NCBI RefSeq assembly: GCF_036971445.1
Contig: NC_091478.1
Location: forward strand, 62,930,001 to 62,994,000
Origin: Narcine bancroftii
Lineage: Eukaryota
Reading direction: 5' to 3'
Length of the DNA: 64,000 nucleotides
Shown here one piece after another: positions 4,753-45,443 of this stretch. The notes beneath the pieces were generated by a model that saw only the letters and a program-made list of their open reading frames with translations, made no database searches and was not told the origin of the DNA. The position numbers and the translations under genes are program-made. Each line of letters starts with the position of its first letter. The first letter of the stretch is position 1.

Positions 4753-4757
4753 CACTG

Positions 4758-4990
4758 GTTGCAGGCAATTCTTATACTGTGCACAGAATTTAACATTTAT
4801 AAAGTTCACCAGGCTTTGGTGCTTGAAAGGTAAATGGTTACCATCAAGGAAGGCTCTTGTCAGTTTTCAGAGTGAGATTTGTTGTTTCAGGACGTCCACA
4901 ACTGATGTATTTCCATCAGCCTCTACTGCATCTGGCATTTCGGGTGTTTCGGTATGATACCAGCTATCCTGGAAAATTTCTACAGATGCT
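4758..4990. repeat. Fragment of the LTR-like repeat into which the Gypsy element inserted
   Basis: CACTGGTTGCAGGCAATTCTT..TACTGTGCACAGA..AAAGTTCACCAG matches about 42085-42260 inside the solo LTR; end approximate. Confidence 0.8.
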
Positions 4991-5489
4991 TTGCACATCT
5001 CAAAGTGTGCTGACTGCTGCATCATGGTCTGGTATGAGAACACCAATACCTCTGAGCGTAAAACCACCAGAAAGGTACTAGACGCAGCCAAGGCATTTCA
5101 GGCAAAACCCTAGAACATCTACAGGGAACAGTTGCCCTCCTGTTCTTGATGATCCTACCGACGGATTAAACCCAATCTGATTATCTACCCCCTGTGCTTC
5201 TCATCTCGTCCATATTTCTAACGATAACCATATATAAATTTTAAATTTAGACATACAGCACGGTAACAAGCCCTTTCTGCCCACCAGCCCGACCCGCCCA
5301 ATTTACACCCAATTGACCTACAAAACCGGTATGTTTCTAAAGGTGGGAGGAAACCGTAGACCCGCGGAAACCCCACGTTTACAATGGACGGAAATTCTTT
5401 CTTGCTGCAGCCAAGCAGGTCCTCCGTAAAAAAAATCGACACCATCTACATTCAATTAAAGAAGGGATAATATTACAAGCTGCAGTATG

Positions 5490-5750
5490 GGATTCTAGGA
5501 CAAGAGGGCACAACTTCAGGATAAAAGGGCTAATAATTTCCTTAGCCAGAGGGTGGTGAGTCTGTGGAACTTGTTCCCACAGGCGGCTGTGGAAACCAGA
5601 TCGTTGGGAATATTTAAGGAAGAGATTGGCAGGTATTTGATTAGTCAGGGCATCAAGGGTTACGGGGAGAAGACCTGGGAGTGCGGCTGAGTAGGTGGAT
5701 GGATACAATAACGGAGAAGACTCGATGGGCCTACTTCTGCTCCAAAATCT
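5490..5750 (+). mobile_element. CR1 LINE 3' fragment (also in copy B, about 39390-39650)
   Basis: CR1-type C-terminal remnants (GACAAGAGGGCACAAC..., AGGGTGGTGAGTCTGTGGAAC, TCGATGGGCC). Confidence 0.75.
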
Positions 5751-5904
5751 TGTTACGTTGCAAGATACATGATGTTTGAGCATTACAGGATTAGTGTGAG
5801 AAGGGGGCGTTGTTTCGAGGGTAAATTCATCACAAATCATACTTTCTATATATTAAGTCGTCAAGGTGAATTCAGGAGGGCAAGAAATTAATGCATTTCA
5901 AGCT

Positions 5905-6060
5905 CCTACTTTTCCCCTTCCTCAATTATCGGTGCCAAACTCTGAAACGACGTCGTCTAATTATTTTCAACATATAAATTCAACATCCCAACGCTCACTT
6001 CCAGGATGTGATAAGCCCCGGCAACTCGTCATACAACCCAAACGTCAGACGTCGCTTCAC
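5905..6060 (+). promoter_or_regulatory. Candidate proximal promoter of gene A
   Basis: TTCCCCTTCCTC (ETS/PU.1-like), CACTTCC (ETS), TGATAAG (GATA) and AACGTCA (CRE half-site) within about 200 bp of the ATG. All are conserved in copy B (about 39810-39965). Short motifs, so function is inferred. Confidence 0.4.
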
Positions 6061-6108
6061 ATTTAACAGTGCTCCTTACTGCAAGGTCATTTGAATCCCC
6101 TATTCAGA

Positions 6109-6133
6109 ATGGTTCTCCTTCTGCTTCTCCGAG
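6109..6133 (+). CDS. Gene A exon 1: leader peptide MVLLLLLR
   Basis: ATG plus hydrophobic run, phase-1 donor G|GTAATA; 15 nt shorter than the gene B leader. Confidence 0.8.
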
Positions 6134-6249
6134 GTAATATTTAACCAGTACCATTTTGTTCCTTGTTCTACTTATTTAGTTCTCTCTCTTTATCTCCCAT
6201 CTCGATGCCGGCCTCACCGATTTAATTGCGCCATGTTACATTTTCTCAG

Positions 6250-6573
6250 CAGTTGCAGATCAGCGAGGTTTTCATGTAAATCAATTACCCAAAGAAACCA
6301 GTATACCAGTCGGGGGAAATGTTACCTTTTATTGTGTGTTGCCCATCATCCGCGACAAGTCCAGTGTGAAGGTCTACTGGTGGAAGGAGGGTGAGAATGC
6401 ATACCAACACAGCGATGTCGCCAATGGAAAACGATATGGTCTCCGAGGTAGAGCAAGTTGGTACTTTGAGTTGTGCAAAGCAACTGTCCAAGATTCTGGA
6501 GTATATCGCTGTTCCGTCATCGGTCCGGAAATGGTTGCAATCAATGGAAGTGGATCGCGTCTAATTGTTCACG
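6250..6573 (+). CDS. Gene A exon 2: Ig V-set domain, germline-joined VJ type
   Basis: Acceptor TTTTCTCAG and donor G|GTAAAT, phase 1-1, 324 nt. Translates AVADQRGFHVNQLPKETSIPVGGNVTFYCVLPIIRDKSSVKVYWWKEG...YFELCKATVQDSGVYRCSVIGPEMVAINGSGSRLIVH, with B-strand Cys, C-strand Trp, DSGxYxC and J-like GSGSRLIV. Confidence 0.95.
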
Positions 6574-7206
6574 GTAAATCATATTAACGGGAAAAGCAAA
6601 CAGCGAATAACTGTCTGAACAATAAGAAACGGAAAGGCTGGTAGACAGACCATGATTTGTCGATACCCCTCTACCCGCTCAATGAAGATGAGGAAGGCAG
6701 AGATTCTGCCGCCCGTCTCCCAACTCGTACAGTTCGCGGTTAAGTTCATGCCCGCCCGAAGAGTCTTTCTGCAACGTGGCACAAAGCTTTATGGATTCTC
6801 ATTTGTATTGTCTGGTATATTCACCATCCTCACCCAGGCCCCCATCCTATAACTATTTTGTCTGATGTGGATCAAACAACCTGCAAATAAAAGCATTCCT
6901 CAGCCATTCTATACTCAGACGATCATCGCTCCACCATTGTCCGAGTACATTGCGGGAATAATATCGCAAGTTATCAGTAGCAAAAAAACACCATTGAAAA
7001 TGGTGGAAGGAGAAGGCAACCACCCATTCACTCCCCCGCCCCGCACACTCACACACACCTTTAACCTTTCCCTTTTTAATTCGGCGGAGAAGCTCGTTCG
7101 TGCTCATTTTTGTTCATGGAATATTGGTTACTTCCCAATTACTTACAGGAAAGAATTAGTCCGCATTCTGTCTTTCTCACGCAACATTGACAGATTTGTT
7201 TCTTCT

Positions 7207-8252: not shown

Positions 8253-8549
8253 TGGCGCCAACTCCACTGAAAATCTACTCCAAGACTGTTGATGGGAATC
8301 CACTCACTAGACATGTTCTCGTATGCGAAACGGCTGCATTTTACCCGGAGAATCTCACCCTAATTTGGTACTGAAATGGAACGAAAATCACAGCGGGAAC
8401 TCATACAAGAAAAGAGAAGAACGCGGAGGGACTGTATGTAGTTTCCAGCGATTTAACCTACAGCAACGGCGAGGATCAATATGCCTGCAAGGTATATCAC
8501 CTCTCTCTCCAGACTCCAGCCGTTGCCAGGTATTCTGTTGCGAAACAAG
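8253..8549 (+). pseudogene. Gene A exon 3: Ig C1-set domain with in-frame TGA at 8372-8374
   Basis: Acceptor GTATTTCAG and donor G|GTATGT, phase 1-1, 297 nt. Translates VAPTPLKIYSKTVDGNPLTRHVLVCETAAFYPENLTLIWY*NGTKITAGTHTRKEKNAEGLYVVSSDLTYSNGEDQYACKVYHLSLQTPAVARYSVAKQ. C1 hallmarks: C..FYP, W, N.xG.Y, YxCxVxH. Confidence 0.92.
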
Positions 8550-9008
8550 GTATGTCGTCAACAGTCTAGTGAGTCGTGATTTGTTGTAAATGCCTTGATG
8601 CATTGTATAAATTCTTGCAGTTAATAATTCCGAAATTAAATCATTCAAATTCCATGGGGAAATATCGGATGGAGCATTGATTTCATTTCCAATTTGTAAA
8701 AGAAAACCTGTGCGTCTGAGGCATGGCCAGTCAAATGCCGTTGGCAATCATTTTTTCAAAAAATTGCTGCGCTACAAAAGCATAGAGATATTAATCGTTC
8801 ACGTTTTGTACCCACCTCATTATCATTAGGTTTCTTTTGTTTGCGATTTTAAGTGTGTCAGAGTTTTGCTCTACCACCATCTCTAAACTTCTTGACTTCA
8901 CGATGAAATGGCTGTCTTTTAAAGTATTTAACATTTGTTATAGTTCAAATAAAAATGATTAATCATCATAAGACAGATGAAATATTTAACGTTCCTGATT
9001 CATTTCAG

Positions 9009-10379: not shown

Positions 10380-13090
10380 TTTGGCTGCATTACTAACACA
10401 CTGTTCAGATTGCTAAGCAAGCTCAACTGCACATGGAAAGCTGGCATCTCGTTGACTATGTCATCACCCGACAATGGGACATCTCTGATGTTGGTATCAC
10501 CAGAATTAAGCGTGGAGCTGAGTGCTCAACTGATCATCAAATGGAGTGGTTGGATCTATGTTTATCGATCAAACCTTCAAGCAGACTGATTGCAGCCAAA
10601 CCACCCAAAAAGCTGAACACCACCAAATTGAAACACCGTGAATGTGGCAATGCACCTAAATCCTCCATGGAAACTACACTAAGCAGACTGGTTGAGAATC
10701 CACCAGATGATATTACTGAGCACAAGAATGCTTTCAAAGAAACAACTTATGGCACTGTTTAGGACACTTTGGGGAAAGTCAAGCCCAAACATCAGGATTA
10801 GTTTAATGAGTACAACCAATTTGGCACAAGACCTTCTAATAGCTAAGACAGTTGCACACCAAGCTTGTCTTCAACACCCAAACTCAAGTTCCAAAAAGCA
10901 TGCCTTTTTGAGTGCAAAATCAACTTTGCAGAAGCAGCTCAGAGATTTCCAAGACCAGTGGTGGATGAACAAGGCCAAGGAGTTACAAGCCTTCGCTGAC
11001 TGTAATGACTCAAGAATGAAGCAATCAAGGTTGTCTATGGTCCATCAAAGCAAGGTACCTCACAACTCTTGAGCAAAGACAGTAACTCCATCTTAACTGA
11101 AAAGTCAGAGCACATGAAAAGATGGCAAGAACCCTTCTATGAGCTGTTGGATAGATTAGGAATCATCACCGATGAAGCACTGGGTACCCTCAACTCATAT
11201 TGTTTGAGCCAGATGCTCCCCCCTACTCTTCACAAGGTCATCAAAGCCATCAAACAGCTAAAACCCAACAAAGCACCAGAGCCTAATGGTATTGCAGCTG
11301 AGATCTACCAGTATGGTGGCAACACACTGATATCATGCCAACACCAGCTGTTCACAAAGTTGTGGGAAACTGCAAAACTACCACAAGACTTCAAAGGCGC
11401 ATTAATCCTGACCATCTACAAGAACAAGGGAGGCAAGAAAAATTACAAAAATTATCGTGGACGTCTCTCTTCTGTCAGTTGTGGGAAAATGCCTTGCAGA
11501 GATCACCCCTAGCTGTTTGGTGTCTGACATCAATGACAACATCCTTTCACAAAGCCATTGTGGTTTTCGAGCAGGCCGAAGCAGAGTGGATATGATTTTC
11601 TCACTGAGGCAGCTTCAAGAGAAATGTGTGGAGCAGCAGATAAGTCTCTGTCACATTTGTTGATCTAACCAAAGATGGCCTACAGAAGCTCTTACCAAAT
11701 TTCAGTTGCCCTCCTCCCATGCCTAACCAACATCATCCCTGAATTCCACAAGGTATGGAAGGCTGCATCAATATGTGTGATGAGTTGTCAGACATATTTC
11801 CCATCTCCAATGGTGTAAAACAGGGTTAAGTTTTGGCCCCTACACTGTTTGGACTATTCTTCACAGTTGTTCTTCAAGATGCCACATCAGACCTGAAGTT
11901 AGGGGTCTTCCTAAAAATGAGGGCTGATGATGGGCTTCTCAACCTCGCAAGACTTAGATCAAAAACAAAGGTCAAGGACATAGTTGCGCATGAGCTATAG
12001 TTTGTTGATGACTGTGTACTGGTTGTCCACTCTCTCAAAGACTTACATGAGATCACCAGTCACTTTGCCAGTTCTGCCAAGAGATGCAGATTGACAATCA
12101 GCTTTAAAAAGACAGAAGTTTTTGACCAACTGGCCCCTTGACCAAGTTACGAAGAACCAACTTTCCTCATTGATGACATTCTTCTCAATGCTGCCAACAA
12201 ACTTGGGCAGCACAATAATATCCTCAGCTTCGCTAGATGTAGAGATTGAATCAAGAACCAGAAAGGTTTGCTTTGCTGAAAGATCAGGTTTGGTCAGAGA
12301 GCATCAGGTTGGCCAGCAAGTGCAAGGTGTACAGGGCCACTGTCATATCAGGTATGTCGTCAACAGTCCAGTGAGTCGTGATTTGTTGTAAATGCCTTGA
12401 TGCATTGTATAAATTCTTGCAGTTAATAATTACGAAATTAAATCATTCAAATTTCATGGGGAAGTACTGATTTCATTTCCAATTTGTATGAAAAACTTGT
12501 GCGTCTGAGGCTTGGCCAGTCAAATGCCATTTGCAATCACTTTTTTTTATTTGCTGCACTACAAAAGTATAGAGATATTAATCGTTCACATTTTATACCC
12601 ACCTCATTATCATTAGGTTTCTTCTGTTTGCGATTTTTATATGGATATGAGACATGGTGCCCATATCAGAGTCACTTTTGTCAGATTGACCAACTGTGGC
12701 GGCATCATTACGTTCTCTGATGAAAATCACCTGTGGCGAGACAAGGCCTTCAATATCAAGGTCCTTTCTAGAGCCAGAATGCCAGCAGTTTCATCATTAG
12801 TGATGTCAGGCCAACTGTGCTGGGAAGGACATGTTGTCAAAATGCCTGACAGAAAACTGCCCAAGGACATATTGTAAAGCCAACTGTACCCAAAATTGAG
12901 GAGGCCAGTGACTACAGTACAAGGATGTTCTGCACAAGAGTCATAAGAAAGATGGCATTGCCCCATCAACATGGCTCAAGATTGCTTGCAGTGGAGGGAC
13001 CCCATCAGAAAAGGTTTGCATGCTGTTGGAGAACAAGCTCCAAGAAGCAACAGAGGAAAGGCACAGAAAGCAAGCAGAAGAAGACAATTG
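10380..13090 (+). mobile_element. Old RTE-clade LINE (endonuclease and RT remnants), interrupted at 12350-12637
   Basis: WHLVDYVITR, KAPEPNGIAAEIY, GFRAGRSRVDMIFSLRQLQEKCVEQ, GVKQG..LAPTLF and GHVVKMPDRKLPKDIL, with many frameshifts. Confidence 0.9.
12350..12637 (+). repeat. Third copy of the C1 donor site and first about 290 bp of the downstream intron
   Basis: AGGTATGTCGTCAACAGTCCAGTGAGTCGTGATTTGTTG... aligns to 8548-8850 and 41263-41565. Confidence 0.9.
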
Positions 13091-13294
13091 GCAGAAATTC
13101 TGACAAACTGCAGCTGAATCGACACGTTTTTTAATAAAGACAACTACAATATTACAACGAATTAAAAAGATAACAATGACAAACCAGAGATAGAAAATAA
13201 ATAATCACAATTATGATTGTGCAAGGAAATACATGCAATAGTGTGGACAGCCTTTTTGTGGTGTTGGAGCAGTGAATGATACTTGTAACAAACG

Positions 13295-13660
13295 GGCAGA
13301 ATTTCAAGAGTAAACTCAAAAACAAATCTGTTTCTATTTCTTAAGTTGTCAGGGTGAATTTGTGAGGCCAAAAAAAATTAATGCATCTAAAATTGCATTT
13401 TTTAACAAAAAAATACTATCTGGACTATGAATTATGGATGTTTTACAATTTACATTTGCTTTTTATATGATTGTTTTATTAATTATGTTTAACTATTCAT
13501 ATAATCTCATTATATTTTTATTATTATAAACTTTTCATTAAAATCAATAAAAATATTTTAAAATACAAAAAAGATAATCGCATTTTCCCCTTCCTGAATT
13601 ATGGGTAGCAAACTCTGAGACAATGTCAAATAATGCACTTTAATATAAATTTGGCATTCT
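13295..13660 (+). repeat. Diverged third copy of the receptor upstream/promoter region
   Basis: TTAAGTTGTCAGGGTGAATT..AAATTAATGCAT and TTTTCCCCTTCCTGAATTATGGGTAGCAAACTCTGA align to about 5805-5985; split by an AT-rich insert at about 13400-13580. Confidence 0.75.
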
Positions 13661-15009
13661 GTGCTATTAAAGTGGAATATTAGAATAATTTACAAGTTTT
13701 AAAGTGAATTAAAACACAGAATGGAAGTCTGATGCTTCTCCTACACTGCCTGCATTCCAAAGTCATCTGCTCGTGCCTCTTGAAGGTCGTAAGTGGCTTT
13801 GAAATGCAGGCAGTGTAAGAGAAGGGGTGTGTGTTTTTGCTGAGGGTTTTGAAGCAATATATTATTCAACCTTAGGCTTTGTCCGGTGCATTCTACGCTA
13901 AGGATGCATCTGAAGAGGCAGAAGCGGCCCTTTAAATTGCCTTTCAGGTGGCAGCGTTTAAAGTGCAACACTGGCCACCTGAAGGACACAGCTGCACAGG
14001 ATGCGGCTCTGAGCACACTCAGGCTCCTGCCCAGTGTCAGCTGTGATCAGCAGCCTGACCCTTTCACATCCACTTTCAGCGAGCTGTATTCAGGTGGCTG
14101 GGGGAGCCACTGAGCTGAGCTGACTATCCCTCTCGGAGGAAGGTTACGTAGCCTCCTGAAGGGGGGACAAGGGGTGTTACTTGCGTTATATGTAGAATAA
14201 TAATGTAATCATTTAGTCCAACTTATTTACATGAGTGTATAAAAGTTAATACATTCCTTTGTATGAGAGGAGACCCAGGAGACTGCTTTTGTCGAGAAGC
14301 TTTTTAATATTTTCAATATTTCAATTCAAGGCAAATGAATACAATTCGTATTTTTGCATATAACAGCAAATCCAAGAACTATTCTGCATGCATCAAATAC
14401 TGCATTTAGTATAGATAAGTATAAAAAATGTGTTTTAATTGTTGTTACCCAATCGTAACTGCTTCCCTTGTTAATTTATGTCCTTTGCTCTGATGTAGTT
14501 CCGCATTACTTTTCCGAGGGTGATGAGCAGTTAGTTCTACAGGGTAATACGCTTGCTGGAGTGAACGAAAATGGCTCCTTTCGCTGGCGGTGCTGCTCAC
14601 TCAAGTCGCAGCATCATCGGATCTGTCAGATAGGATACATTTGATTTCTGCTCGCCGACTCATATCGTATCATAACTCATTGAATCTTTTCATTCACATT
14701 TTTTTTTATTTGCCAAGAATTTGACAGAGAAGCGAAACATCATCTCTTTGTTTTAACAATTGAAATGTTTGGTTTCAGCAAGCAACCTACGGCCACGTTT
14801 TAATTTTCGATTTGACCAAGATAAATCATTTATTTTCATTATTGTACACAGGATGCAGCAAAATGCTTGTTACACAGTCTCCTATTTTACCAGAATTGTT
14901 TTTAAAAAAAGTGAATGATAAAGCGTTCAGTTTTTGGAAGCAAAATATTCCATCCCACTTCTGCTTCTATCAAATCAAAGTTCATTTTAGAATCATCCTG
15001 GTCATTTCA

Positions 15010-15400
15010 AAGTTCAAATTTATTTGTCAGGGTTCTTGGTTCCTGTGGGCAAGTCAGACTTTTCCCAGTAACTGTAAACTGTACTTAAGAAAAAGATACA
15101 TGTACAAAAGTGACACATGTAAAGCAACGTTAACAAACTGCCCTTACAATAAAGACAACTAAATATTCAGTAATAAATAATGTGCATGGTAAGAGGCCTT
15201 AAATGAGTCTCTGATTGAGTTTGTTGTTGAGGAGTCTGTTGATGGAGGGGTAGCAACTGTTCCTGAACCTGATGGTGCGAGTCTTGTGGCACCTAAACCT
15301 CTTTCCTGATGGCAGCAATGAGAACAGAGCATTTCCTGGGTGGTGTGGATCCTTGATGATTGCTGCTGCCATCCGATGTTCTCGATGGTGGGGAGAGTTT
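15010..15400 (-). mobile_element. Rex1/Babar-like LINE 3' end
   Basis: IIKDPHHPGNALFSLLPSGKRFRCHKTRTIRFRNSCYP on the minus strand. Confidence 0.8.
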
Positions 15401-15618
15401 TGCCTGTTTAATACTGGATGGCATCCATTCCCTTTTGCAGGAACCAATATGTTTCATCGCCAGCCTCTTAAAACACTTCTCTGTGGACGTGTGAGCCACT
15501 GGTCATTAGATTATTAATTGCATCCCAACTCCCACACATACATCAGCTCAGTTCTCAGTCATGGTAAACACAACCATTGTTTGGCCAATAATTCCATATT
15601 ATGCTGTTATTCTTTCAG

Positions 15619-15735
15619 ATTGTGTCTTCATACGTCCTTCCTTGTACATTAGATATGCTGTGGGTTTGACCTTTCTGTTCCTGGCCATCGTTTGCCTTAC
15701 CATTGGGGCGCGTAGTCAATTACCCATTTATAAAG
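15619..15735 (+). CDS. Activating-type transmembrane exon (Arg in TM, stalk Cys)
   Basis: Acceptor TTATTCTTTCAG and donor AAAG|GTACGT, phase 1-1, 117 nt. Translates DCVFIRPSLYIRYAVGLTFLFLAIVCLTIGARSQLPIYK. Confidence 0.8.
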
Positions 15736-16015
15736 GTACGTTAACTAACAGAATTCACTCTCATAGAAAATGCCATGGCATTACGATGGACAATGGGGAG
15801 AGGTTTTATATATATATATATATATATAGTGTGGAAAAATGAGATTTGATTATTATTTTAAATTGAAATTGTGCTGAGACTGGTAATTCTTCCAAAAATC
15901 AACCAATTTAGCATGCAGAATTATGCTATTAAGGGGCACTTGTTGCAGACACACATTTCTGTGAATCAGTGAATGCTTTAACTATGCTTTCTAATTCATC
16001 TCCACTGCTCTGCAG

Positions 16016-16062
16016 GGAGGAAGATTTGTAATTGTGCCACCCCACCATGTGGGACCCAATGA
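16016..16062 (+). CDS. Short cytoplasmic terminal exon GRKICNCATPPCGTQ*
   Basis: Branch-like CTAAT, then TCATCTCCACTGCTCTGCAG acceptor. Phase-1 compatible with the TM exon, stop TGA at 16060-16062, no tyrosine motif. Confidence 0.6.
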
Positions 16063-16969
16063 TTCCCTCAATTATGCATCATTGTAAATGCTCAACTTTG
16101 AAGGATATCGATAACATACAGATATTTTCTCATGTGCAGAATGCATTCATGGTATATTTATTCAAACAGCACACCTGACTTGTAGAAACATACACATCAC
16201 AATGAAAAACATATTTGTCAGGGGAAGTCGTGTATCTCATCCTCATGGTGAAATATATTTCCCGAAGAATATATGAGGGTGTTGCACCATCTTTTGGCAG
16301 ATACTTTATTGGCTGTTTCTGATTCAAATGTAACCAAAAGCAGACTGAAAATTGGAATGATTAATTTGCAGAAAATGTACCTATTTATGGGACTAATTTT
16401 AAATAATCTTTATGTATTGAAGACAGGTGTTTGTACATTTTATTTATGGAGTAATAGGCTTCCTCCAGCCTCTTGCACTAGGCTAATTGCAAAGCACAAT
16501 GTAAAGAGAACTGTTTAAAATATCCGCCGGGACTGAAAAAAGGAATGTAAGGATTTCAATCTCACACTTAGTATTCAACCTGGGTGACTTACAATGCACT
16601 GATGTTACATATTGTATTTGACATTTCAGGTAATCAATATGCTGGTGTTCATTTCTCCCTCCAGCAGGCTTCTACAGTTCCTCTCCACTGGCTCAATAAT
16701 TGGTTTAATCTGACCACATTTTGCTTATCTATTTCAACTTATCCACCAACCATCTTCTCAAAATAATACCAAAGGCTTTCTATAAGAATAAAGAATAGGC
16801 ACAGATTATTTGGTAAATAGGTAACTAATAGAACGCCATTATATTCAACTGTAATATATGACTATATGAGGCATGAGGTATTTGTTGTATGTGGAGTAAA
16901 TACGAAGAATTTCTGATGTGCTGGTTGATGGGGTTTTCATTTCATTGGGCCTTTTCATACATATTACTG

Positions 16970-17431
16970 TCCACGCTGCTGAAGATCCAACTGCGCTGGG
17001 TGGGTCACGTCTCCAGAATGGAGGACCATCGCCTTCCCAAGATCGTGTTATATGGCGAGCTCTCCACTGGCCACCGTGACAGAGGTGCACCAAAGAAAAG
17101 GTACAAGGACTGCCTAAAGAAATCTCTTGGTGCCTGCCACATTGACCACTGCCAGTGGGCTGATATCGCCTCAAACCGTGCATCTTGGCGCCTCACAGTT
17201 TGGCGGGCAGCAACCTCCTTTGAAGAAGACCGCAGAGCCCACCTCACTGACAAAAGACAAAGGAGGAAAAACCCAACACCCAACCCCAACCAACCAAAAT
17301 TCCCCTGCAACCGCTGCAACCGTGTCTGCCTGTCCCGCATCGGACTTGTCAGCCACAAACGAGCCTGCAGCTGACGTGGACATTTACCCCCTCCATAAAT
17401 CTTCGTCCGCGAAGCCAAGCCAAGAAAAGAA
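16970..17431 (+). mobile_element. Young RTE LINE, 5'-truncated 3' end
   Basis: QLRWVGHVSRMEDHRLPKIVLYGELSTG...FPCNRCNRVCLSRIGLVSHKRACS*; tail GAAGCCAAGCCAAGAAAAGAA. Confidence 0.92.
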
Positions 17432-38910: not shown

Positions 38911-40010
38911 CGCGGTGACCGGATCCGATTCATCATCTCCTCGGGCAGTGAGTTCTACATATTAATGAATCTCCGTGTAAAAAAAAGGATCTTTCAGATC
39001 CCCTTGAAACCTTCCTCGCATCTTGAACCGATGCCCTCCCGTTCTTGATGATCCAACCGACGGAGTAAACCCAATCTGATTATCTACCCTCTCTGTTCTT
39101 CTCATCTCGGCCATATTTCTAACGATAAATATATATACATTTTAAATTTAGCACGGTAACAAGCCCTTTCTGCCCACCAGCGCGCGCCGCCCAATTTATT
39201 CACAATGAACCTATAAAACCCGGTACTTTTCGAACAGTGGGAGGAAGGAAACCATAGACCCGGGGAAAACCCACTCATTCAATGGACGGAAATTCTTTCT
39301 TGTTGCAGCCGAGTTGGTCCTCCGTAAAAAAAGTCACCCGTCCACATTCAATTAAAAAAGAGATAATAATTTCAAGCTGTAGTATGGGATTCGAGGACAA
39401 GAGGGCACAACTTCAGGATAAAAGGGCGTCAATTTAAGAGAAGCGGAATAGTTTCCTTTGCCAGAGGATGGTGAGTCTGTGGAATCCAGATCGTTGGGTA
39501 TATTTAAGGAAGACATTGGCAGGTATTTGATTAGTCAGGGCATCAAGGGTTACGGGGAGAAGACCTGAGAGTGGGGCTGAGTAGGTGGATGGATCAACTC
39601 ATGATAGAATAACGGAGAAGCCTCGATGGGCCTAATTCTGCTCCAAAATCTTGTTATCAATGTAAGAAGCATGATGTTTGAGCATTGCAGGATTAGTGGG
39701 AGAAGGGGGCGTTGTTTCGAGGGGAAATTCATCACAAATCATACTTTCTATATATTAAGTCGTCAAGGTGATTTCAGGAGGGCAAGAAATTAATGCATTT
39801 CAAACTCCTACTTTTCCCCTTCCTCAATTATCGATAGCAAACCCTGAAACGATGTCAACTATTTATTTTGAACATATAAATTCAACATTCCAACGTTCAC
39901 TTCCAGGATGTGATAAGCCCCGGCAACTCGTCATACAACCCAAACGTCAGACGTCGCTTCACATTTAACAGCGTTCCTGACTGCAAGGTCATTTGAATCC
40001 CTTGTGCAGA

Positions 40011-40050
40011 ATGTCAGGGACTGCGATTGTTCTCCTTCTGCTTCTCCGAG
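40011..40050 (+). CDS. Gene B exon 1: leader peptide MSGTAIVLLLLLR
   Basis: AGAATG context, hydrophobic core, phase-1 donor G|GTAATA. Confidence 0.85.
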
Positions 40051-40166
40051 GTAATATTTAACCAGTACCATTTTGTTCCTTGTTCTACTTATTTAGTTCT
40101 CTCTCTTTATCTCCCATCTCGATGCCGGCCTCACCGATTTAATTGCGCCATGTTACATTTTCTCAG

Positions 40167-40490
40167 CAGTTGCAGATCAGCGAGGTTTTCATGTAAATCA
40201 ATTACCCAAAGAAACCAGTATACCAGTCGGGGGAAATGTTACCTTTTATTGTGTGTTCCCCATCATCCGCGACAAGTCCAGTGTGAAGGTCTACTGGTGG
40301 AAGGAGGGTGAGAATGCATACCAACACAGCGATGTCGCCAATGGAAAACGATATGGTCTCCGAGGTAGAGCAAGTTGGTACTTTGAGTTGTGCAAAGCAA
40401 CTGTCCAAGATTCTGGAGTATATCGCTGTTCCGTCATCGGTCCGGAAATGGTTGCAATCAATGGAAGTGGATCACGTCTAATTGTTCACG
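40167..40490 (+). CDS. Gene B exon 2: VJ-type Ig V domain
   Basis: 324 nt. Differs from gene A at two positions by eye (CVF vs CVL, and a silent TCA/TCG); same splice sites. Confidence 0.95.
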
Positions 40491-40993: not shown

Positions 40994-41151
40994 NNNNNNN
41001 NNNNNNNNNNNNNNNNNNNNNNNNNNNNNNNNNNNNNNNNNNNNNNNNNNNNNNNNNNNNNNNNNNNNNNNNNNNNNNNNNNNNNNNNNNNNNNNNNNNN
41101 NNNNNNNNNNNNNNNNNNNNNNNNNNNNNNNNNNNNNNNNNNNNNNNNNNN
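40994..41151. other. Assembly gap (158 N)
   Basis: N run. The collinear interval in copy A (about 7070-8436) is about 1.4 kb and includes the 5' part of the C1 exon. Confidence 0.99.
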
Positions 41152-41838: not shown

Positions 41839-42615
41839 TGTTACTGAGTCCAGAGGACCCCAAAAACTAGCAGCAATAAATATGCACCACAACACAGTGT
41901 TACTTCAACAAAAGTAGTTTTTACTTGTATTTGAACAATAAAACAGAATTGAACTTTAAATTATTACTTAAATTACCTAATAATTAATACCCCCCCTCCC
42001 CACCCCAATCCCTCTAATACTAAGCGCAGGTGTGTGTAATGTATATTTTAGATTAGAAAGGTTCTTTGGATCACAGTCCAATCTCACTGGTTGCAGGCAA
42101 TTCTTGTACTGTGCACAGATGTTTGCATTAGCAAAGTTCACCAGTCTTTGGTGCTTAGCAGGCAAATGGTTACCACTCAAGAGGGTTCTTGCTGGTTTTC
42201 AGTGATAGATTCCTTTTCTAGACATCCACAACTGATTCCTACTCAATCAGTCTTGCTGACGAACCTTGCCCCCTTTTGGGTTCTCCAGGTGATCCTCTTT
42301 CTTTCAGACCGCCAATCTCCGCCTCTGACCAGACAGCCTTCCAAAGTTTGCCAGCTGCTGCCCCTGGAACGGATTACTGTCTCCTCTCTCTCTGTTTCAC
42401 ATCATCGCTCTCTGAGAGCAACACTCTTCTCTGCCTGCAAAGATATCATAGTCTCCCAGGCAAGCTGCTAACGATACTTTATTGCCTCCTGCAAAGAGCA
42501 TTCTGAAATAGTCCTGCAAATAATCTATGTTTTAATGTGTGTGTGTGTGTGTATGTGTGTGTGTGCAAGCTGCTCTAAGAATTCCTCCCAAACCACCTGT
42601 GAATACTCTGTCACA
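41839..42615. mobile_element. Solo LTR (777 bp) in the C1-TM intron of gene B
   Basis: Starts TGTTAC and ends GTCACA; 4-bp TSD CTAA at 41835-41838 and 42616-42619; partial second copy at 4753-4990. Confidence 0.8.
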
Positions 42616-42652: not shown

Positions 42653-42766
42653 ATTCTCGCAATACACTCGCAAACTACCTGGTTCCTAGTGGCGTGGTGG
42701 TTGGATTACTGATTTTAGTGCTAATGATTGTTGTCGGGGTACGGTTGGGACGACAGGAACTTGAAG
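42653..42766 (+). CDS. Gene B exon 4: uncharged transmembrane segment
   Basis: Acceptor ATAACTTTGCAG and donor GAAG|GTAAGA, phase 1-1, 114 nt. Translates DSRNTLANYLVPSGVVVGLLILVLMIVVGVRLGRQELE. Confidence 0.9.
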
Positions 42767-45399: not shown

Positions 45400-45443
45400 G
45401 TGAAGAGGAATGTGGGATGGAACCAAATGGCCACCAGGATCAG
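45400..45443 (+). CDS. Gene B exon 5: short cytoplasmic exon GEEECGMEPNGHQDQ
   Basis: Acceptor TTTCGCCTCTTTCAAG and donor CAG|GTATGT. Phase 1 to 0 bridges the TM exon and the terminal exon exactly. Confidence 0.7.

What the first reader, a model, noticed from the sequence alone, without database searches (positions are those of the whole stretch)
15619..16062. Activating module: Arg-bearing TM exon with stalk cysteine and Cys-rich short tail
LYIRYAVGL places an Arg at the outer end of the TM, as in the LIRM/LLRA-type TMs of FcR-gamma/CD3-zeta-coupled receptors (FcalphaRI, LILRA, NKp46, NKp30). DAP12 partners such as SIRP-beta use a central Lys instead. A Cys just before the TM suggests a disulfide-linked dimer. 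Tail cysteines (CNC..C) could be palmitoylated. This module is unrelated in sequence to the gene B TM exon.
Basis: partly seen in the sequence, partly recalled or inferred. Interest (0 to 1): 0.8.

Follow-up and report, generated by a model that had tools for sequence, protein, structure and literature searches.

The report
Orphan "on-switch" anchor of ray receptor
Two small exons in the lesser electric ray look like the membrane anchor and short tail of an "on-switch" immune receptor, but no RNA or protein model uses them and the receptor gene upstream carries a stop codon. They are most likely a silent leftover.

Summary
They encode a stalk Cys, a hydrophobic span with an Arg at its outer edge, and a 23-residue motif-free tail.

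A splice and hydropathy scan of both strands finds only this exon and gene B's known TM exon at that quality, so chance is unlikely.

The tail exon is a diverged copy of gene B's first cytoplasmic mini-exon, with the same size and phase. Its TGA sits where gene B has a splice donor. "Unrelated to gene B" is therefore only partly right.

Shark, ray and chimaera relatives repeatedly combine a basic outer-TM residue with a very short tail, so the "activating design" reading is reasonable.

Function is not shown:
- Three same-species runs give zero contig depth over both exons.
- No protein model contains them.
- Gene A's C1 exon has an in-frame TGA and its leader has a 15-bp deletion.
- An old promoter relic lies between C1 and the TM exon.

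Whether the Arg is inside the membrane is ambiguous, and FcR-gamma coupling is inference only.

The scan had noted this receptor family elsewhere in this genome, but not this module.

The parts
15619..15735 (+). TM exon, phase 1/1. It encodes a stalk Cys, Arg12 at the outer edge of a 19-residue uncharged core, and a basic stop-transfer stretch. It ends with the split Gly codon.
   Evidence: Sequence and frame. It is one of only two top-quality TM-type exons in the window. Hydropathy. The family TM profile matches only weakly (E=0.31).
15736..16015 (+). Intron of 280 bp with a GTACGT donor and a (TA)n run at about 15794-15840.
   Evidence: The repeat is flagged.
16016..16062 (+). Terminal coding exon: 2 nt plus 14 codons (GRKICNCATPPCGTQ), then TGA at 16060-16062.
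   Evidence: It has the same size and phase as gene B's mini-exon 45400-45443. Anchored alignment of the exon plus flanks gives z=3.5, with 1 of 1500 real-sequence controls reaching it.
16060..16140 (+). Start of the presumed 3' UTR. It is homologous to the intron that follows gene B's mini-exon. The TGA lies where gene B has its GT donor.
   Evidence: The downstream 80 nt give z=3.95, with 0 of 1500 controls reaching the observed score.
16787..16792 (+). First AATAAA after the stop codon, a candidate poly(A) signal.
   Evidence: This is a pattern match only, with no RNA support.
13259..13659 (+). Diverged relic of the family promoter region, in two collinear blocks: 13259-13402 and 13583-13659.
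   Evidence: It is 70-77% identical to gene A 5770-5980 and gene B 39672-39890. No V or C1 relic lies between 8900 and 15600.
6109..6133 (+). Gene A leader exon. It has an in-frame 15-bp deletion relative to gene B, directly after the ATG.
6250..6573 (+). Gene A V(J) exon. It differs from gene B's V exon by one residue.
   Evidence: Pfam V-set. It is 99% identical to XP_069755609.
8253..8549 (+). Gene A C1 exon, with an in-frame TGA at 8372-8374 where the intact paralogue P0163 has Arg.
   Evidence: Pfam C1-set matches the second half.
42653..42766 (+). Gene B TM exon, used as the comparator. It has no charged residue.
   Evidence: The family TM profile gives E=1.8e-7.
45400..45443 (+). Gene B first cytoplasmic mini-exon (G)EEECGMEPNGHQDQ, the homologue of the tail exon.
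   Evidence: It is present in the RefSeq proteins P0002 and P0163.

Best explanation
These are the true transmembrane and terminal exons of an activating-type member of the V-C1 'SIRP-like' paired-receptor family of cartilaginous fish. That type has a short tail and a basic residue in the outer TM.

The tail exon descends from the family's first cytoplasmic mini-exon. Its reading frame now ends in a TGA exactly where the inhibitory paralogue has a splice donor, and that is what makes the tail short.

In this Narcine bancroftii assembly the module is probably orphaned or silent. It lies 7 kb downstream of gene A, which is a young copy of the 5' half of gene B and carries a nonsense codon in C1. 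An old promoter relic lies between gene A and the module.

If such a chain were made, its Arg would be expected to pair with the Asp pair of an FcR-gamma or zeta-type dimer. That step is inferred, not shown.
For: - Exon quality: only this exon and gene B's TM exon pass a strict splice, phase and hydropathy scan of both strands.
- Tail exon: it has the same size and phase as gene B's mini-exon 45400-45443, the Cys at residue 5 is shared, and the downstream flank is significantly similar when anchored (0 of 1500 controls).
- Family design: relatives end soon after the same K|G junction and have Arg in the outer TM, for example catshark P0136 and P0004 and Mobula P0015. Short tail and outer basic residue go together (7 of 7 against 5 of 34).
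- Signs of silence or decay: zero contig depth over 15434-16812 in three same-species runs at 90% likeness or more. No protein with gene A's V exon plus this TM exists. No 61-192 aa protein shares words with the exon. There is a TGA in C1 where paralogue P0163 has Arg, and a 15-bp deletion in the leader.
- Older unit: a promoter relic lies at 13259-13659.
Against: - The three runs are small, of unknown tissue, and only guessed to be RNA. Absence from their contigs is weak evidence.
- The TGA could be allele-specific. It could also be bypassed by skipping C1, because all exons are phase 1 and RefSeq isoforms of gene B join V directly to TM.
- The TM exon itself is not significantly similar to the family TM profile (E=0.31) or to gene B's TM exon DNA (z=1.56). 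Its origin within the family is inferred from its position and phases.
- I tested the tail-exon homology after noticing the similarity.
Confidence: 0.5

Rival explanations
1. The module is part of a working activating partner of gene B. Gene A's V exon, with or without C1, is spliced to the Arg-TM and tail exons. The receptor signals through FcR-gamma or zeta and is expressed in cells or conditions not sampled.
For: - The ectodomain exons are nearly identical to gene B: A and B are 90-96% identical from 1 kb upstream to 345 bp past C1, and the V exon differs by one residue.
- All phases are compatible.
- The same design recurs in the family.
- An earlier scan note reports an expressed FcR-gamma gene in this genome. 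I did not check it.
Against: - There is a TGA in C1.
- The leader is shortened.
- No contig covers the exons.
- No RefSeq or other protein model contains them.
- A promoter relic lies between C1 and the TM exon.
Confidence: 0.22
2. The exons are real, but the Arg lies outside the bilayer. The product would be a tail-less anchored form that needs no adaptor, such as a decoy or ligand sink.
For: - The best 19-residue hydrophobic window (Y13-A31) excludes the Arg.
- Arg at a comparable spot also occurs in relatives with ITIM-bearing tails, such as P0017 and P0144.
Against: - The best 21- and 23-residue windows include the Arg at position 4.
- An outer basic residue is strongly associated with very short tails in the family.
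- KIR2DL4 shows that a TM Arg and an ITIM can coexist with FcR-gamma coupling. I state this from my own knowledge; it was not tested here.
Confidence: 0.18
3. It is a chance open frame in repeat-rich intergenic DNA, not an exon.
For: - There is no RNA, no protein model and no close homologue.
- The TM exon matches the family profile only at E=0.31.
Against: - It is one of only two loci in 128 kb of strand that pass the strict exon scan, the other being a known exon.
- The tail exon and its flank are homologous to gene B's mini-exon in the same register.
- It has the correct strand, order and phases downstream of the V-C1 exons.
Confidence: 0.08

Closest known systems
Predicted short-tail members of the cartilaginous-fish V-C1 'SIRP-like / tapasin-related-like' family: Scyliorhinus canicula 'signal-regulatory protein beta-1-like' (P0136), S. 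canicula P0004, and Mobula hypostoma P0015
   Same: They share the V(J) plus C1 ectodomain family and an Arg in the outer part of the TM. The tail ends a few residues after the K|G junction that closes the TM exon. Inhibitory ITIM-bearing paralogues lie on the same chromosome.
   Different: TM sequence similarity to this exon is weak: an RY[AT]VG(G)L core with P0004, and profile E=0.31. This tail is longer and has three Cys. Here the upstream C1 exon carries a stop codon and no protein model exists.
Mammalian SIRP-beta1 / SIRP-alpha pair
   Same: It is a paired design. The V and C1-set ectodomain is nearly identical to that of an ITIM-bearing partner, and the activating form has a short tail and a basic TM residue.
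   Different: SIRP-beta uses a central Lys and DAP12 and has V-C1-C1 (my own knowledge; rule in PMC1440944). Here there is an Arg at the outer edge and a single C1.
FcR-gamma-coupled receptors of the leukocyte receptor complex (Fc-alpha-RI, LILRA, NKp46, OSCAR, GPVI)
   Same: [quoted passage not shown]
   Different: The ectodomains are unrelated Ig types. In those receptors about 16 hydrophobic residues follow the Arg before an acidic residue, so the Arg must be buried (from memory). Here 19 uncharged residues follow, so burial is not forced.
Gene B of this window (XP_069755607 / XP_069755609) and its neighbour P0163
   Same: The exon order and phases are the same. The tail exon is homologous to their mini-exon (G)EEECGMEPNGHQDQ.
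   Different: Their TM has no charge and is clearly of the family type (E=1.8e-7). They splice on to ITIM-bearing exons, whereas this module stops.

Membership tests
Adaptor-coupled activating member of a paired receptor system | Ectodomain nearly identical to that of an inhibitory partner nearby | tested here: met
   Gene A 5126-7051 and 8437-8894 are 90% and 96% identical to gene B. The V exon differs by one residue. That these exons are joined to the TM exon is not shown.
Adaptor-coupled activating member of a paired receptor system | Basic residue inside the transmembrane helix | tested here: inconclusive
   Arg12 is just outside the best 19-mer window and at position 4 of the best 21- and 23-mer windows.
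Adaptor-coupled activating member of a paired receptor system | Short cytoplasmic tail without ITIM, ITSM, ITAM or YxxM | tested here: met
   The tail is the 23 residues after the core, RSQLPIYKGRKICNCATPPCGTQ. Its single Tyr is in no such motif.
Adaptor-coupled activating member of a paired receptor system | Transcribed and spliced to an ectodomain, with an intact reading frame | tested here: not met
   Contig depth is zero over 15434-16812 in three runs, although this is weak evidence. There is a TGA in C1. No protein model exists.
Adaptor-coupled activating member of a paired receptor system | Surface expression or signalling depends on FcR-gamma, zeta or DAP12 | not testable with these tools
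   This needs co-expression experiments.
Cartilaginous-fish V-C1 SIRP-like family | V-set domain with a J-like strand, followed by a C1-set domain | tested here: met
   Pfam V-set and C1-set matches on gene A's exons. Relatives occur in sharks, rays and chimaera.
Cartilaginous-fish V-C1 SIRP-like family | TM exon of the family type (xGCAVGGLAFLVLxIxIGKRC) | tested here: inconclusive
   The profile of 43 family TM segments gives E=0.31 for this exon, against 1.8e-7 for gene B's exon. The DNA comparison gives z=1.56.
Cartilaginous-fish V-C1 SIRP-like family | First cytoplasmic mini-exon after a K/E|G junction | tested here: met
   It has the same length and phase and a shared Cys. The anchored flank similarity is reached by 0 to 1 of 1500 controls.

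The most novel reading that the evidence does not exclude
Gene A plus this module is a live gene. It makes a germline-joined V(J)-C1 receptor, or a V-only one by C1 skipping, that resembles an antigen-receptor chain and couples through an outer-membrane Arg to the ray's FcR-gamma or zeta dimer. This would show that the Arg-Asp-Asp assembly mode, and paired on/off receptors built on a TCR-like chain, already existed in the common ancestor of jawed vertebrates.
Probability: 0.15. Interest if true: 0.6.

Novelty: new member of a known kind. Interest (0 to 1): 0.33.

Why it matters
Paired on/off receptors are well known in mammals, birds, frogs and bony fish. The V-C1 SIRP-like family of sharks and rays exists only as automatically named database entries, and I found no paper describing it.

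This locus shows one concrete route by which a short-tailed form can arise from an inhibitory gene: the reading frame stops at a former splice donor after the first cytoplasmic mini-exon.

If the module proved to be expressed and adaptor-dependent, it would give a cartilaginous-fish test case for how old the arginine-to-FcR-gamma assembly rule is. As it stands, it is most likely a silent remnant and of modest interest.

Tried and rejected
- TM exon searched by reference, as the stop-free stretch 15510-15839 with region 37-76: no candidate shared words with it. Only proteins of 61-192 aa could be seen.
- ESM Atlas with the TM exon: no usable hit.
- Pfam on the TM exon: only a sub-threshold DUF3955 match, dismissed.
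- Earlier scan notes by sequence and by words: nothing on this module.
- The look-up of sequencing runs listed no RNA holder. The three same-species runs gave no contig on the exons.
I therefore could not fetch the catshark, Mobula or neighbouring Narcine loci to compare exon structures or to look for further copies.
- Rejected: that 12350-12637 marks a third gene unit with a lost C1 exon. It is a 287-bp patch of the post-C1 intron sitting inside a LINE copy, and contigs of other copies of that LINE skip it.
- Rejected: relic ITIM exons downstream of the module. None were found up to 32 kb.
- Rejected: relic V or C1 exons between 8900 and 15600. None were found.
- The composition-preserving shuffle test of TM similarity is biased in favour of any TM segment, so I do not use it as evidence of homology.
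- The SINE-like repeat at 15040-15433 is not tRNA-like by ARAGORN.

Full report
**What is in the sequence**

The window comes from the lesser electric ray, Narcine bancroftii. Gene B's products are XP_069755607 and XP_069755609.

At 15619 a good acceptor (ttctttcag) opens a frame reading (D)CVFIRPSLYIRYAVGLTFLFLAIVCLTIGARSQLPIYK. It closes at AAAG|GTACGT, with the last exon base at 15735. After a 280-bp intron, an acceptor at 16016 (ctctgcag) gives GRKICNCATPPCGTQ and a TGA at 16060-16062.

Both junctions are phase 1. So are gene A's leader (6109-6133), V(J) exon (6250-6573) and C1 exon (8253-8549).

**Is it more than chance?**

I scanned both strands of the window for AG..GT phase-1/phase-1 exons of 28-60 codons with a hydrophobic 19-mer. 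With a 6/7 donor match only two loci remain: this exon and gene B's known TM exon at 42653-42766. Weaker thresholds add about six poorer loci.

The stretch 13640-16740 has no other copy in the window. I take the exon pair as real sequence features, not a chance frame.

**Relation to the family**

Gene A's V exon finds a family of V-C1 proteins in sharks, rays and chimaera. Their automatic names are inconsistent: [quoted passage not shown], "signal-regulatory protein beta-1-like" and "tapasin-related protein-like". I found no paper on this family.

Several members have a basic residue in the outer TM and a tail of only 5-18 residues. Examples are catshark P0004 (..FRYTVGGLAFLLLLIIAGARYKSR), catshark P0136 (..AIRCTVGGLVFLVLIIIIGAEFCLKNKGNEA) and Mobula P0015.

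In 41 distinct family TM segments, all 7 proteins with tails of 18 residues or fewer carry such a residue, against 5 of 34 with longer tails. My hand hypergeometric calculation gives p of about 3.5e-5, uncorrected for relatedness.

It is not exclusive, however. P0017 and P0144 have an Arg there together with ITIM-like tails.

**The TM exon**

A profile of 43 family TM segments, leaving out the Narcine model P0163, hits gene B's TM exon at E=1.8e-7. It hits this exon only at E=0.31, over VGLTFLFLAIV.

Anchored DNA alignment to gene B's TM exon gives z=1.56. I infer its place in the family from its position, its phases, the shared (G)AT start and the K|G end.

**The tail exon**

The tail exon has exactly the layout of gene B's first cytoplasmic mini-exon at 45400-45443: 2 nt plus 14 codons, with a Cys at residue 5.

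The best local alignment of the two 644-bp regions falls within 2 nt of the common register. Anchored global alignments beat real-sequence controls:
- Exon plus flanks: z=3.5, with 1 of 1500 controls reaching the observed score.
- The 80 nt downstream: z=3.95, with 0 of 1500 controls reaching it.

The TGA lies where gene B has its GT donor. The short tail is thus best read as a frame that stops at a lost donor. The direction of change is an inference, resting on the fact that the spliced-on state is the common one in the family. I ran this test after noticing the similarity.

No relic of ITIM exons lies downstream up to 32 kb.

**Which ectodomain?**

The only Ig exons upstream on this strand are gene A's. 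Gene A is a young copy of gene B, running from about 1 kb upstream of the leader to 345 bp past C1 (90-96% identity).

Two defects are visible:
- An in-frame TGA at 8372-8374, where the intact neighbour P0163 reads IWYRNG.
- An in-frame 15-bp deletion right after the ATG, which leaves a very short signal peptide.

Between C1 and the TM exon, at 13259-13659, lies a collinear relic of the family promoter that is 70-77% identical. This fits an older gene unit that kept its TM and tail exons but lost its leader, V and C1.

The 287-bp copy of the post-C1 intron at 12350-12637 is a patch inside a LINE, not a third unit.

**Expression**

No listed run holds the stretch as RNA. I laid the three same-species runs on 11100-17000 at 90% likeness or more. 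They give zero depth over 15434-16812 and depth only on repeats.

These are small runs kept as contigs, only guessed to be RNA and of unknown tissue. This is therefore weak negative evidence.

No protein in the two large collections combines gene A's V exon with this TM. No 61-192 aa protein shares words with the exon.

**Mechanism**

In mammals, receptors that assemble with FcR-gamma carry an Arg in the N-terminal TM segment. DAP12 partners carry a central Lys. The contact is one basic residue against an Asp pair (PMC1440944).

Here Arg12 is followed by 19 uncharged residues and then another Arg. It is either just outside a minimal core or at position 4 of a 21-23 residue helix. Sequence alone does not decide which.

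A 2014 survey states that the gamma chain appeared with bony fish (PMC4016189). I checked neither claim.

The disulfide dimer and palmitoylation ideas remain untested. Cys26 near the inner end of the TM is at least as plausible an acylation site as the tail cysteines, but this is my own inference.

**Verdict**

The exon pair is a true, family-derived, activating-type TM and tail module. In this assembly it is probably orphaned or silent. FcR-gamma coupling is a reasonable but untested inference.

**Procedural notes**

- The N run at 40994-41151 in gene B was left as it is.
- Database searches were made exon by exon, by reference.
- In local scripts I did hold the TM and tail peptides as typed or joined strings for hydropathy and pairwise display. 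No conclusion depends on the join.

Noticed in passing
window 12350-12637: A 287-bp copy of the first part of the post-C1 intron, 89% identical to 8548-8850, sits inside a LINE reverse-transcriptase frame. Its homology starts at the C1 splice donor. Contigs of other copies of this LINE skip it and have CCTTGC in its place. It looks like a templated repair patch rather than a transposon insertion.
   Followed up: partly
window 15040-15433: A very abundant SINE-like repeat ends about 190 bp upstream of the TM exon. Summed contig depth is above 100,000 in all three runs, and many contigs have poly(A)-like loose ends at 15189. ARAGORN finds no tRNA-like part.
   Followed up: partly
window 6109-6133 versus 40026-40065: Gene A's leader exon lacks 15 bp directly after the ATG (the residues SGTAI in gene B). 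The remaining signal peptide has only a 6-7 residue hydrophobic core.
   Followed up: partly
window 40169-40489 to 42653; proteins P0002, P0150, P0163: No RefSeq model of the Narcine genes joins V to C1. Gene B's isoforms go from V straight to TM; half of its C1 lies in the N run. The neighbour's model, P0163, starts in the V-C1 intron.
   Followed up: no
proteins P0017 (Mustelus asterias), P0144 (Heptranchias perlo), P0003 (Hypanus sabinus): Some family members combine an Arg at the outer TM with long tails, two of them ITIM-like. This recalls KIR2DL4. An outer Arg is therefore not diagnostic of a tail-less form.
   Followed up: partly
PMC4016189 versus scan note s1-877375: A 2014 survey says the FcR common gamma chain first appears in bony fish. 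The conflict was not checked here.
   Followed up: no
window 4753-4906 versus 42085-42236: An 81% match links DNA just upstream of gene A's duplicated block to gene B's C1-to-TM intron. It may be a small repeat or a trace of a further gene unit.
   Followed up: no
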